From positions 2,356,001 to 2,420,000 of the forward strand of contig NW_027270938.1 in assembly GCF_040938485.1 (NCBI RefSeq): DNA of 64,000 bases, written 5' to 3'. The translations under genes were made by a program, and so were the position numbers. The notes below the pieces were generated by a model. It was given only the letters and a program-made list of their open reading frames with translations, was not told the DNA's origin and searched no databases. This document shows positions 340-6,802 of this stretch, in pieces (the first letter of the stretch is position 1; the number at the start of each line of letters is the position of its first letter). Origin of the DNA: Diadema antillarum (lineage: Eukaryota).

Positions 340-3300
340 AAGCGCCAAGTTCATAACGCTGTCCGAGTGAAATCGCAGCGCCCTACTCGGTCGCAGCGAC
401 GGGTACTTCCAGAAGAGGATGTTGTCCGTAGTCGAGGCATGGCCCGAGATCAGTTCGTGCTCGGCTTCGAACCACTGCAGGGACGTGATCTTGAATCAGT
501 AAGAGTGAGACGAAAGGGGAAAAAAAATCAGCTACGGAGAATGAAACTTTGATTCCTTAGAAAAGGCACTGGTCTGACGATGAACTGTGTCAAGGTGTAT
601 GTCACATCATCCCATTGGTAGCACATAATGTCTTATTCGCTGTACAACTCCTGGTCGAACTTCCTGAACAAACCAAAATAAACTATATAAGTTCGAAACT
701 GTCACCATTATGACTAGCTGTTTGCCTGATTGCTAATTCGAATGCGTTCAGTCGGATGATATGAAATCACGGCTGCAATAAGATTTTCCCTTGCGATAGA
801 TACTGCTACGGCCAATTAAGCCTTTGCACAATTCCGCCACTATTTTTGTTATCATCGTAATTATGAGCGTATAGTTTATGTCCACAAAATGTGAACAATG
901 AATGTGCCAACGAAGTTACATCAGTTTTGTTTAGTACATTGGTATTGATTATGGAGTATGATGAGGTTACTTAAAAAAAGAGATCATGGACGACTGCCTG
1001 CGAGATCAATTGTGTCTAATACTCTTGACCTATAATAGTTATCATGTGACCCACAACACGTGACTCTCATCGAGTTGCTCTCGTCACGTAACTTCGTCTG
1101 TCCATTACTGTGACTGGGATGTAATAATGGCAGTGAATGACATACAAGTATGTCGAAACCTTTTCCGAACCTCATTTTCAACACGTCGCTCCTTGCTCTT
1201 CAGGCCGGTGATCAGGTTCCAGAATTTCATAGTGGGTTCCTTTTTCGCGTTGCCTGTTGCCAGGAGACCCGGTTGCCATGGACACCACGACATTGCCTGT
1301 GGGAGGATACAGCTTCACGATTGAATCATTTTTATGACGCATGTTTTAAGATGCTCATATAAAATGAGAGATAAAGTGAGTCCATAAACCTGCAACAGCT
1401 CACTTTCCAACGATTATGGATAGGCCTTTCGCTACTTTGTTTATTGTCTGCGTGTTGAATGAGTAAAAATGGGGGAGAATCCTCGCACTCGCAGTATGGC
1501 TGCCGAATATAATACATTGTATTGCCTTTTGAATGTGTGCTCGTGATAATCTTTTACATACAGAAATTTTCAAAAGAGAGGATGCCCTATCCAAGCGAGG
1601 AAAATTGACAGAAAGTTGTGGCCCTCTTAATAACCCACTGCAATTCATTAGTATAGTATTGTATAGGTATGACTGTATACAACCCTAAAGCTGTATATGC
1701 ATGCATTTAGGGTCAAAGGGGGAATGTGCATCAGCTATACTTCCATATCAAACGTGTGGCCTCTAGTACAACTTGGCCGGAAACTGGAGAGCAGCTATGC
1801 AACTTTTGATTTACCGTAATGGGGCCAGCGTGGGCGTTCAGAAACTCATGCAGCGGCTCCCGGGGCTGCCGCCTCTCCCATATCATCAGATGGCCAGATG
1901 AGTCCCCGGTAGCCAGTAGATCGACGTCCTTGTCGTAGTGGCATGTGAGTACGGCAGTGTCGTGTCGCTTGAACGTGAACCCTGGCTTGTGGGACCGGAT
2001 GCGAGTGTCGTAGTGGTACACGCCACCGTCCCTGCATCCACTGAAATGTCAAGCGATGAAGACGCATTATATGCCGGCATTTTTGCGCATTTATATTTGC
2101 GTGTAACTGAAATTAATGAAATACGTGTCCTACATTCATCGAAACAGAAATTCATTTCAGACTTGCGGTTTAATGCCATGTAAATCAGGAGCCCATTCGG
2201 TTCAGAAAGGGGTTTGCTACGATGGAAGATGCTACAATCGCAGTTACCATGGTAATAGCTCAAATACTCACATTTCAGTTGTTGCTGCATTGATGTTGTC
2301 AAAGAGACTCCAATTATTGCTATCTACAATATTAACAATAGAAAAGATCTTCATGAAGGGATGCATAAGTGCAGAAGGGAAAAAATAATGGCCATCCCAT
2401 TTTGGGGAGTTGCAGAATTCAAATCGACACATACATGACTCCGCATGCAAGCACCATCGAAGGTGATTAGCTCCAGAAAAGTCCAAACTCACCACATCAG
2501 GCCAGTCCTGTTCCACTGCAGTGAGTAGGCTGACGATTCGAGTGGGACCATGTCATAGTGCGTGCGTATGATGGAGTCGGGATTGCTGAGAGTCTATGGA
2601 ACATGGAAATAAAGAATTAAACCACAGAACACACACACACACACAAAACACAGAAAAGCTGCATGGATTCATTAAAAAAAAATGACACTGTGCGAAGGTC
2701 CAAATCGCTGTGTCGGTAATTTTCACAGAATTGTCGTTTTGGTTTTATTATTTTATTTTGTTTGTTTGTTTGCTTGCTTGCTTTTTACATTTAAAAAAAA
2801 TTGACCCAGGGCGGGGAAATTTTCAATGAAATAATTATGTGTGATACTTGTATCAAGCTTTCGCGATGATCTCCTAACAGACCATTATTGTCGTACAGTT
2901 GTATTACTAGTATGTAACGTAGAAGAGAGAGTAGCAGTTTCACTGGTTACAATATTAAGTATTAGGTCTATAAGGCTATGATGATAAAGGTGGCGATATA
3001 ACTTACGAGGAATTAGGCTCTGTTGTACTTAAGAACGAGCAGAATAACAAAATAAAACAGAACAAACAACAAGAACAGGAAGCAATTGGGAACAAAAAGA
3101 ATGACGATCATCAGATCTAGAAGGAGAGGAGAGGAGAGGAGATGCAAACAGCGAAGAAAAGGATAAAATGAGAAGTTTCGAAATGCAGAGGGAGCAAGGA
3201 CCAAGGAGGAGAATCAACATTAATGTGTGACGATCGAACGGGGCAGAGGTATGGACGCCGATAATTTAGTCATTAGTCATTAAGCATTAGTCATCAGTTA

Positions 3301-6300: not shown

Positions 6301-6802
6301 ATATTTATGTGTTCAAGATATGGATTCTCAATGTAATTCGACTATCCCATATCACTATAACAGCAGATTATGACTTTTGTTGTCGTCGGAGATAATTAAT
6401 CGAATGTTTTGATTTTAAGTTTGTCATGTCCCCTAGGACTATATGCCAGTCATCATGTAATTAATGTTCAGGTCGCCCTGTGGAAAATACAATGATTTCA
6501 AAATAAGCATATTAAAAATTACAATCCGAATATCGACTACAGGTTCTCACGGAATCGTTCAAGCTGCTATGTCCAGATATGTCCAGAGCGTCCAAGCAAC
6601 TGTTCGACGTCGCAGTCGAAGAGAACGAGTCGTCGGAGAGGTCACTCAGGTCCGTACTCCCGTGTCGATGTCGACCCGCCGTGTTCGAGGGTGTCCGCGA
6701 CAGCAGAAACTCGGCAAGGTCGAGATCCAGAGCCCCTCGGTTGGGGATGAAACGGTCCAGAATGGATGGGACCAGCACGTTGGCGTTTATCGCACTGGAC
6801 AT
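340..6802 (-). CDS. Divergent CDC20/fizzy-family APC/C co-activator (WD40); 3' end unresolved
   Basis: Exons (minus): 6551-6802, 5061-5169, 3953-4096, 3329-3537, 2493-2593, 1815-2040, 1171-1296, 340-489 (alternative donor at 318). All introns are GT-AG with compatible phases (0,1,1,0,2,0,0). Motifs: C-box DRFIPNR, KILR (EKILRF), PEKIYDVP, WNRTGLMCGCRDGGVYHYD, AMSWCPWQPGLLATG, ITSLQWFEAEHELISGH, FWKYPSL. The final WD strand and IR tail were not found convincingly in 1-339. Confidence 0.88.
5880..6270. mobile_element. Modular foldback element (tandem ~28-30 bp units in inverted arms) in intron 1 of the CDC20-like gene
   Basis: Left arm units like CCCACGAGTCTGACACTAGGCAAA; right arm carries their reverse complements (TTTGCCTAGTGTCGGACTCGTGGG); centre near 6040. 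Confidence 0.7.

What the first reader, a model, noticed from the sequence alone, without database searches (positions are those of the whole stretch)
340..6802. CDC20 paralogue that keeps its APC/C and Mad2 docking motifs but has lost the whole KEN-box receptor
Seen: C-box DRFIPNR, KILR and a WD40 propeller that aligns with CDC20 blade by blade. Known (human CDC20 numbering, from memory): the KEN receptor uses D184/Y185/Y186, N329/N331, T377, Q401 and R445, while D177/P179 contribute to the D-box pocket. In this protein NDYYLN reads KSAVHN, GGNDN reads GDSSG, GGGTSD reads GNAKKE, SQV reads NEI and HTSRV reads HSDSV. Every KEN-contact position is therefore changed while D177/P179 (IYDVP) are retained, and eight exons stay in frame with intact splice sites, which argues against a pseudogene. 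Inference: a specialised APC/C activator, plausibly meiotic or germline (analogous to Drosophila Cortex or yeast Ama1), with rewired substrate specificity. It may also escape BubR1-KEN-dependent checkpoint inhibition, or act as a Mad2 sink or dominant-negative.
Basis: partly seen in the sequence, partly recalled or inferred. Interest (0 to 1): 0.72.

Follow-up and report, generated by a model that had tools for sequence, protein, structure and literature searches.

The report
Sea-urchin CDC20 copy without degron receptors
This is a real, conserved sea-urchin gene that arose as a copy of the cell-cycle regulator CDC20; it keeps the motifs that dock CDC20 onto the anaphase-promoting complex but has replaced the residues that recognise the usual destruction signals, so it may be a natural "degron-blind" partner of that complex, though its function is untested.

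Summary
On the minus strand of window 340-6802 there are eight GT-AG exons of a CDC20/Fizzy-type gene. It has the C-box DRFIPNR and KILR. Every KEN-receptor position differs from human CDC20: D184S, Y185A, Y186V, N329S, N331G, T377K, Q401E, R445S.

The gene is longer than reported. A 28-nt exon lies at 276-249. A last exon lies about 380 bases before the window start. Together they complete blade 7 and end in an LR tail, giving 502 aa.

The genome is Diadema antillarum. It also holds two canonical CDC20-type genes and one FZR1, and these keep all the receptor residues.

Orthologues exist in D. setosum, Strongylocentrotus, Lytechinus and one mRNA contig. All lack the KEN receptor, so the loss is old. 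Nonsynonymous difference is 0.30 against saturated synonymous difference of 0.80, so this is not a pseudogene.

- The D-box arginine site is also damaged (E465 lost; D177 not kept in camarodonts).
- The two ABBA-site tyrosines are gone.

Six shared intron positions mark it as CDC20-derived rather than FZR1-derived.

Function is untested. No RNA run was listed, so a meiotic or germline role could not be tested. My best reading is an APC/C-docking paralogue with rewired or abolished degron recognition.

The parts
6551..6802 (-). Exon 1 (aa 1-84). ATG at 6802; C-box DRFIPNR at 6757-6737; CDC20-like AEFLLS at 6715-6698.
   Evidence: The C-box aligns to human CDC20 residues 77-98. The frame is open 12 codons upstream of the ATG, and that stretch resembles the orthologues' N-terminal extension, so a further 5' coding exon is possible.
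5061..5169 (-). Exon 2 (aa 85-120) with KILRF (5097-5083), the KILR / Mad2-interacting motif position.
   Evidence: Aligned with KILCY, KILHL, KILSF and RILSF of canonical CDC20s.
3953..4096 (-). Exon 3 (aa 121-168). IYDVP (D177/P179 equivalents, 3986-3972) and the start of KSAVHN, which replaces NDYYLN.
   Evidence: The annotated model P0157 uses an in-frame acceptor 42 nt further in. The longer form matches orthologue spacing. A C-rich polypyrimidine run precedes the acceptor.
3329..3537 (-). Exon 4 (aa 169-238), blades 1-2. Y240 equivalent is L.
   Evidence: PF24807 positions 13-69. Aligned to human CDC20 188-243. The phase-1 intron inside the codon equivalent to Y186 is shared with both CDC20-type genes.
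2493..2593 (-). Exon 5 (aa 239-271), blade 2-3. Y279 equivalent is T (WNRTG).
1815..2040 (-). Exon 6 (aa 272-347), blades 3-4. GDSSG replaces GGNDN (1907-1893).
   Evidence: PF24807 positions 109-176. 100% match to P0001, and 61% and 58% to the orthologues P0002 and P0005. Alignment.
1171..1296 (-). Exon 7 (aa 348-389), blade 5. MSWCPWQ signature; GNAKKE replaces GGGTSD (1254-1237); family-specific TGLKSKERRV.
   Evidence: PF24807 positions 182-217. Best PDB hits are Slp1, FZR1 and CDC20.
340..489 (-). Exon 8 (aa 390-439), blade 6. Q401 equivalent is E; HSDSV replaces HTSRV (369-355).
   Evidence: PF24807 positions 224-273. Aligned to human CDC20 403-450.
249..276 (-). Exon 9, 28 nt (aa 440-448, IDPEGERRA, the SPDG position of blade 7). 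It follows a 63-nt intron.
   Evidence: An exon of length 3n+1 is needed to read the last exon in the frame that is conserved in the orthologues. The last exon itself lies outside the window, at window coordinates -382 to -545 (L003:9618-9455). It holds YDNSLCLW and the tail SPFSLGNLR-stop.

Best explanation
This is a functional gene, known so far only from sea urchins, that arose by DNA-level duplication of CDC20 and then diverged very fast.

Shown:
- It encodes a 502-aa protein with a disordered N-terminal arm that carries a perfect C-box and a KILR-type motif.
- It has a seven-bladed CDC20-type propeller.
- It has a conserved C-terminal tail ending in a hydrophobic-Arg dipeptide: LR here, MR in camarodonts.
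- The residues that canonical CDC20 and CDH1 use to bind KEN boxes, the D-box arginine and ABBA motifs are replaced, both here and in the orthologues.

Inferred:
- The protein still docks on the APC/C through the C-box/KILR (Apc8B) and the tail (Apc3/Apc8 pockets).
- It cannot read canonical degrons and cannot be held by the BubR1 pseudosubstrate motifs of the checkpoint complex.
- It therefore acts as a specialised co-activator. It would either turn on APC/C catalysis for substrates that bind by other means, or use a re-tooled propeller face. That face would include the family-invariant D at G328, N at G375, A at G376, E at Q401 and the LKS-ERRV loop.

When and where it acts (meiosis, germline, embryo) is unknown.
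For: Gene model and motifs.

Family and fold. PF24807 is by far the best Pfam family (E 3.6e-53 for P0157) and hits the exons colinearly. PDB sequence hits are CDC20 129 bits, Slp1 119, FZR1 98 and yeast Cdh1 about 80. The AlphaFold model of orthologue P0002 has pLDDT of mostly 85-97 over residues 220-510, with two short dips to 76-79. Its best structural matches are Slp1 and human CDC20, with TM 0.88-0.92 on the CDC20 crystal-structure chains and rmsd 2.1-2.3 A.

Origin. The ML tree puts the family (100/100) inside animal CDC20 (100/98) on a stem of 4.57 changes per site. Six exon junctions coincide with the two Diadema CDC20-type genes, against one with FZR1.

Receptor loss. Residue roles come from PMC9357983 (D184/Y185/Y186; Y240/Y279) and PMC12401543 (Asp177, Glu465, Arg174). 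The canonical genes of the same genome keep all of these.

Constraint. Orthologues exist in D. setosum, S. purpuratus, L. pictus, L. variegatus and an mRNA-like contig. pS is 0.81 (saturated) against pN 0.30 in the propeller. There is one copy per haplotype.

Docking motifs under constraint. DRFIPNR or DRFIPHR is present in all three orthologues whose N-terminus is modelled, inside an arm that is only 35% identical. The tail SPF-x-LG-x-[LM]R has its stop codon at the same place. [quoted passage not shown]
Against: - No binding or activity data exist, and no expression data for this species.
- The tail is not a literal IR.
- The first basic residue of KILR is lost in the camarodont orthologues.
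- The Pfam score is under the curated cut-off: 181 and 159 bits against 200.
- The positions that contact KEN (329, 331, 377, 445) vary among orthologues instead of being fixed to a new state. That fits loss of a site better than gain of a new one.
- AU tests cannot reject placing the family next to the Diadema CDC20s (p 0.31) or next to FZR1 (p 0.30). The CDC20 origin therefore rests mainly on intron positions, N-terminal motifs and scores.
- The 28-nt exon and the choice of exon 3 acceptor are inferred from conservation, not from reads.
Confidence: 0.5

Rival explanations
1. Decoy or inhibitor. The protein occupies the co-activator sites of the APC/C, or binds Mad2 through KILR, without delivering substrates. 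It would then damp APC/C-CDC20 or titrate checkpoint proteins.
For: The docking motifs are kept while all three degron sites are degraded. The KEN-contact positions vary among orthologues, as expected for a site that is simply no longer used.
Against: The propeller is under clear purifying selection, with long invariant blocks (CGC-DGGVYHYD, MSWCPWQ, TGLKS-ERRV). A mere plug would not need these. The Mad2-type motif is not conserved in the camarodonts.
Confidence: 0.22
2. A function independent of the APC/C, as proposed for vertebrate CDC20B. The propeller would serve as a scaffold for other partners, and the N- and C-terminal motifs would be relics or re-used.
For: CDC20B shows that CDC20 copies can leave the APC/C (PMC6220262). 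All degron sites are lost and the Pfam score is under the cut-off.
Against: CDC20B lost the APC/C-binding motifs and kept a propeller 49% identical to CDC20. Here the pattern is the reverse. The C-box is invariant and the extreme C-terminus is conserved to the stop codon over a long divergence, while the propeller is only about 25% identical to CDC20.
Confidence: 0.15
3. Decaying duplicate (pseudogene) or an artefact of alignment or assembly.
For: Very long stem branch. Public gene models for it are inconsistent. No RNA run was listed.
Against: All ten exons are open with GT-AG borders in both haplotypes, with no exonic indel. Orthologues with intact frames exist in several genera. pN is 0.30 against saturated pS. 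One orthologue is held as an intron-free contig with UTRs.
Confidence: 0.02

Closest known systems
Canonical CDC20 (human CDC20, S. pombe Slp1; in this genome the C179 and C486/C202 genes)
   Same: C-box DR[F/Y]IPxR, a KILR-type motif, and CDC20-like residues after the C-box (AEFLLS against ASFLLS). Seven-bladed propeller with best sequence and structure matches to CDC20. Six shared intron positions. A C-terminal hydrophobic-Arg tail.
   Different: About 25% identity in the propeller. KEN receptor (D184, Y185, Y186, N329, N331, T377, Q401, R445), D-box arginine partner E465 and ABBA tyrosines Y240/Y279 are all replaced. Its own KEN and CRY boxes are absent. The tail is LR or MR instead of IR. 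The Pfam score is under the gathering cut-off.
CDH1/FZR1 (C788/C1983 in this genome)
   Same: Same superfamily, same docking logic. Exon 8 alone scores slightly better on human FZR1 than on CDC20.
   Different: The whole protein scores lower (98 against 129 bits). Only one of five mapped intron positions is shared. The N-terminal motifs are of the CDC20 type.
Vertebrate CDC20B
   Same: A lineage-restricted CDC20 copy with a changed function.
   Different: CDC20B is described as vertebrate-specific, keeps a propeller 49% identical to CDC20, lacks the APC/C-binding motifs and does not bind APC/C (PMC6220262). The echinoid gene shows the opposite pattern. No CDC20B sequence was available here for a direct comparison.
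Meiosis-specific co-activators (Drosophila Cortex, S. cerevisiae Ama1)
   Same: Divergent extra members of the CDC20/Fizzy family. A Cortex cluster is among the nearest language-model neighbours of the orthologue's propeller (a lead only).
   Different: These are known APC/C activators with meiotic expression (PMC3162515). Neither expression nor activity is known here, and orthology is not indicated. Whether they keep the KEN receptor was not examined.
Nek2A MR tail
   Same: A C-terminal Met-Arg dipeptide that mimics the IR tail on the APC/C (PMC5717348). The camarodont orthologues end in MR, and Diadema and P0002 end in LR.
   Different: Nek2A is a kinase and a substrate, not a co-activator homologue.

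Membership tests
CDC20/Fizzy family of APC/C co-activators | CDC20/Fz-type seven-bladed WD40 propeller | tested here: met
   PF24807 is the best family and hits the exons colinearly. The AlphaFold model of orthologue P0002 is confident over the propeller. Foldseek's top hits are Slp1, CDC20 and CDH1, with TM 0.88-0.92 on the CDC20 crystal-structure chains.
CDC20/Fizzy family of APC/C co-activators | Score over Pfam's curated cut-off for PF24807 (200 bits) | tested here: not met
   181.2 bits for P0157 (which lacks the last strands) and 158.7 bits for the full-length orthologue P0002. The E-values are 1e-46 to 1e-53, so homology is not in doubt. The family is simply an outlier.
CDC20/Fizzy family of APC/C co-activators | C-box DR[F/Y]IPxR in the N-terminal arm | tested here: met
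   DRFIPNR at aa 16-22. The same motif is in P0002, and DRFIPHR is in L. pictus. Consensus taken from PMC5717348.
CDC20/Fizzy family of APC/C co-activators | C-terminal Ile-Arg tail | tested here: inconclusive
   The protein ends in LR; orthologues end in LR or MR. It is not a literal IR, but it is a hydrophobic-Arg dipeptide at the very C-terminus. An MR tail is a known IR mimic (PMC5717348). Binding was not tested.
CDC20/Fizzy family of APC/C co-activators | KEN-box receptor on the top face | tested here: not met
   D184S, Y185A, Y186V, N329S, N331G, T377K, Q401E, R445S. The orthologues also lack these residues. The three canonical genes of the genome keep them.
CDC20/Fizzy family of APC/C co-activators | D-box co-receptor (Asp177 and Glu465 bind the D-box arginine; Arg174 is a further contact) | tested here: not met
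   D177 is kept, R174 is K and E465 is N in Diadema. D177 is S or G, and E465 is G, H or D/S, in the orthologues. Residue roles from PMC12401543. The leucine-pocket residues were not examined.
CDC20/Fizzy family of APC/C co-activators | Binds and activates the APC/C | not testable with these tools
   This needs biochemistry.
CDC20 branch (as opposed to CDH1/FZR1) | Descent from CDC20 shown by tree, gene structure and N-terminal motifs | tested here: met
   Six intron positions are shared with the CDC20-type genes, against one with FZR1. The ML tree nests it in animal CDC20 (100/98). It has KILR and AEFLLS motifs and scores higher on CDC20. Caveat: AU tests do not reject other placements.
CDC20 branch (as opposed to CDH1/FZR1) | Mad2-interacting motif [KR]-[IV]-L-x-x-x-x-x-P | tested here: inconclusive
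   The sequence is KILRFCPR. The basic and IL residues are present, but the proline is two residues earlier than in KILRLSGKP. The orthologues read RILSFQPR, DILNFKPR and DVLNFKSR. The consensus is recalled from memory.
Vertebrate CDC20B | No APC/C-binding motifs; propeller about 49% identical to CDC20; vertebrate multiciliogenesis locus | tested here: not met
   The C-box and tail are present and propeller identity is about 25%. The neighbours in the window are HSP70, a hydrolase and a SPATA1-like gene. Features taken from PMC6220262.
Meiosis-specific co-activators (Cortex, Ama1 type) | Meiosis- or germline-restricted expression and APC/C activation | not testable with these tools
   No RNA run was listed for this sequence.

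The most novel reading that the evidence does not exclude
Sea urchins carry a natural degron-blind APC/C co-activator. It would dock through the C-box, KILR and an LR/MR tail and switch the ligase on. It would recognise neither KEN, D-box nor ABBA motifs. It would therefore be invisible to the BubR1 pseudosubstrate arm of the spindle checkpoint, and would serve substrates that bind the APC/C directly or through a new propeller surface.
Probability: 0.3. Interest if true: 0.8.

Novelty: new variant of a known kind. Interest (0 to 1): 0.55.

Why it matters
Co-activators are thought to do two things: recruit degrons and switch on APC/C catalysis. This gene looks like an evolutionary separation of those two jobs. 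The docking elements are held under constraint, while all three mapped degron sites are given up. That is the mirror image of vertebrate CDC20B. If it binds the APC/C, it offers a natural tool to ask what a co-activator does without degron receptors, and how a checkpoint-insensitive APC/C form is used in an animal whose eggs and embryos are classic cell-cycle material. It also corrects the public gene models for this locus in Diadema.

Tried and rejected
- RNA evidence. The look-up of sequencing runs listed no run, so read laying was not used and splice junctions are unconfirmed.
- Word search with exon 6 found nothing in the permitted length range.
- Exon 6 alone against the PDB is dominated by generic WD40 hits.
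- My first guess for the 3' end was a long exon 9 ending SSFS. I rejected it once the conserved last exon was found outside the window.
- The annotated ends of P0157 and P0001 were rejected. They read the last exon in a frame that is not conserved.
- A search for a further 5' coding exon gave only a weak hint.
- The sister grouping with the Octopus CDC20 in the tree is flagged as long-branch attraction and is not used.
- AU tests did not discriminate between origins.
- Literature searches for this gene, for SRR6173504 and for the human KEN-receptor residue numbers N329 and T377 found nothing. Tian et al. 2012 could not be opened, so the roles of N329, N331, T377, Q401 and R445 rest on the Arabidopsis equivalents listed in PMC9357983 and on memory.
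Searches were made exon by exon by reference, or with the database proteins P0157 and P0002. The joined model was used only inside local scripts, for alignment, tree and pN/pS.
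Full report
WHAT IS THERE

The window is G000:C50:2356001-2420000 of a 1.75-Gb assembly. The assembly is Diadema antillarum. The database protein P0157, named 'uncharacterized protein [Diadema antillarum]', lies on a contig of 2,691,791 bases. 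That is the length of C124, the second haplotype copy of this locus.

Translation of the minus strand of window 1-7500 shows eight exons with AG/GT borders and a continuous frame. They are 6802-6551, 5169-5061, 4096-3953, 3537-3329, 2593-2493, 2040-1815, 1296-1171 and 489-340. The C-box DRFIPNR is aa 16-22 and KILRF is aa 109-113. Pfam's CDC20/Fizzy propeller model PF24807 matches exons 4, 6, 7 and 8 in colinear order.

THE GENE IS LONGER THAN REPORTED

Downstream there is a 63-nt intron and a 28-nt exon (276-249, IDPEGERRA, the SPDG position). After a further 630 nt comes a last exon that lies outside the window. Its window coordinates are -382 to -545, which is C50:2355618-2355455 or L003:9618-9455. 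It encodes the last strands (YDNSLCLW) and the tail SPFSLGNLR-stop.

This frame is the one conserved in the orthologues, down to the position of the stop codon. Reaching it from exon 8 needs an exon of length 3n+1, which the 28-nt exon supplies.

The public models P0157 (D. antillarum) and P0001 (D. setosum) skip that exon and read the last exon out of frame. P0001 also skips exon 2 and reads exon 3 out of frame. My model has 10 exons and 502 aa. Two things remain open: the exon 3 acceptor, where two in-frame choices lie 42 nt apart, and a possible further 5' coding exon.

Whole-protein searches used the database proteins P0157 and P0002. Exon searches were made by reference.

THE KEN RECEPTOR

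HMMER alignments to full-length human CDC20 (5g04_R) were made exon by exon and for P0157. They are gap-free around each site.
- ILDAPEIRNDYYLN aligns with IYDVPGIEKSAVHN, giving D177=D, P179=P, N183K, D184S, Y185A, Y186V.
- GGNDN aligns with GDSSG, giving N329S and N331G.
- GGGTSD aligns with GNAKKE, giving T377K.
- SQV aligns with NEI, giving Q401E.
- HTSRV aligns with HSDSV, giving R445S.

D184/Y185/Y186 are documented KEN contacts. The Arabidopsis equivalents of N329, N331, Q401 and R445 are listed as predicted KEN-binding residues in PMC9357983.

The same genome holds three canonical family genes. C179 is CDC20. C486/C202 is a second CDC20-type gene. C788/C1983 is FZR1. All three read DD[YF]-, GGNDN, GGGTAD, SQV, H-T-x-R and ADETLR. 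The two CDC20-type genes also end in IR, while the FZR1 tail exon was not recovered. The changes are therefore specific to this gene.

MORE THAN THE KEN SITE IS GONE

In human CDC20 the D-box arginine is held by Asp177 and Glu465, and Arg174 is a further contact (PMC12401543). Here R174 is K, D177 is kept, and E465 is N. In the orthologues D177 is D, S or G and E465 is G, H or D/S.

The two key ABBA-site tyrosines Y240 and Y279 (PMC9357983) are L and T here, and M, L, S, T or I in the orthologues. The protein also lacks CDC20's own KEN and CRY boxes.

ORTHOLOGUES AND CONSTRAINT

A full scan of 1.84 billion representatives with exon 6 found the gene itself in D. setosum (P0001, 100%). It also found P0002 (61%), P0005 (58%) and P0138. 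These are 'anaphase-promoting complex subunit cdc20-like' proteins of S. purpuratus, L. variegatus and L. pictus, plus a 3,695-nt contig from run SRR6173504. That contig carries the uninterrupted 552-codon frame with UTRs, so it is most simply an mRNA.

A profile search found no further members. The next hits are ordinary CDC20s at 125 bits or less. Members were thus found only in echinoids, although databases are incomplete.

Between Diadema and the SRR6173504 sequence, synonymous sites are saturated (pS 0.81). Nonsynonymous difference in the propeller is 0.30.

The two haplotypes differ at two exonic sites, one synonymous and one D147G, with no exonic indel. The gene is single-copy per haplotype. 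A pseudogene is excluded.

ORIGIN

Whole-protein scores favour CDC20: 129 bits, against Slp1 119, FZR1 98 and yeast Cdh1 about 80. The N-terminal arm looks like CDC20, with AEFLLS after the C-box and [KR]IL-x-F.

A careful ML tree puts the family (100/100) inside animal CDC20 (100/98). It sits on a stem of 4.57 changes per site, with a warning about long-branch attraction. AU tests reject neither a clade with the two Diadema CDC20 genes (p 0.31) nor one with FZR1 (p 0.30).

Gene structure decides. Six exon junctions coincide with those of the CDC20-type genes, and only one coincides with FZR1.

An AlphaFold model of P0002 is confident over the propeller. It superposes best on Slp1 and human CDC20. 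On Pfam's curated threshold the family falls just short, at 181 and 159 bits against 200.

WHAT IS KEPT

The C-box is invariant in an otherwise poorly conserved arm, and the extreme C-terminus is conserved (SPF-x-LG-x-[LM]R). CDC20 contacts the APC/C through the C-box (augmented by KILR), the IR tail and a region that touches Apc1. An MR tail mimics an IR tail (PMC5717348).

The KILR motif is good in Diadema and P0002 but reads DILNF and DVLNF in the camarodonts.

Within the propeller, long family-specific blocks are invariant: CGC-DGGVYHYD, GNA in place of GGG, TGLKS-ERRV, and E at the Q401 position.

READING

Shown: this is a conserved, CDC20-derived gene with docking motifs kept and canonical degron sites lost.

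Inferred: it docks on the APC/C and acts without canonical degron reading, out of reach of BubR1's KEN, D-box and ABBA pseudosubstrate motifs.

Whether it activates, competes or works elsewhere is open. So is its timing, because no RNA run was listed.

It differs from vertebrate CDC20B, which lost the docking motifs and kept the propeller (PMC6220262). It can only loosely be compared with Cortex or Ama1 (PMC3162515).

I found no paper on this gene.

Noticed in passing
window 1-9000 versus L025 (C124:2498000-2507999): The assembly holds both haplotypes of this locus as separate contigs, 99.5% identical with 20 mismatches and 10 gaps in 9 kb. Most CDC20-family hits in the genome also come in such pairs.
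   Followed up: partly
G000:C179:828043-835012 and C179:1384655-1406678; G000:C486:186834-191844 with C202:2173965-2178918: There are two canonical CDC20-type genes with IR tails and complete degron receptors, and they are sisters in the tree (98/95). The C179 gene appears twice on the same contig, with different intron sizes.
   Followed up: partly
window 4100-4128: A G-rich run (C-rich on the gene strand) forms the polypyrimidine tract just upstream of the exon 3 acceptor. The two haplotypes differ there by six G.
   Followed up: no
window 5880-6260: Intron 1 holds a block of repeated units of the type cacgagttcgacac in both orientations. It looks like a small repeat element.
   Followed up: no
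window 6803-6838: The reading frame stays open 12 codons upstream of the ATG. This stretch (PQTRSHF) resembles the N-terminal extensions of the orthologues, so a further 5' coding exon may exist.
   Followed up: partly
P0157 and P0001 (public models of this gene): Both public models skip the 28-nt exon and end in a frame-shifted C-terminus. P0001 also skips exon 2 and reads exon 3 out of frame.
   Followed up: yes
window 45787-47535 (+): An intron-free 583-aa open frame is a full HSP70 (740 bits on PF00012).
   Followed up: no
window 57961-59723 (-): Two open frames match the SPATA1 C-terminal domain (PF15743). These are probably exons of a SPATA1-like gene.
   Followed up: no
window 35354-36688 (-), N run 37797-37924: A 445-aa open frame has an alpha/beta-hydrolase (BD-FAE / Abhydrolase_3) match at its C-terminal end only. 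This is the object of another note of the scan. An N run of 128 bases lies nearby and was left alone.
   Followed up: no
G000:C284:4539373-4539864 and C96:233421-233912: An intron-free open frame of about 740 aa has a weak CDC20/Fz propeller match (62 bits). Its identity is unknown.
   Followed up: no
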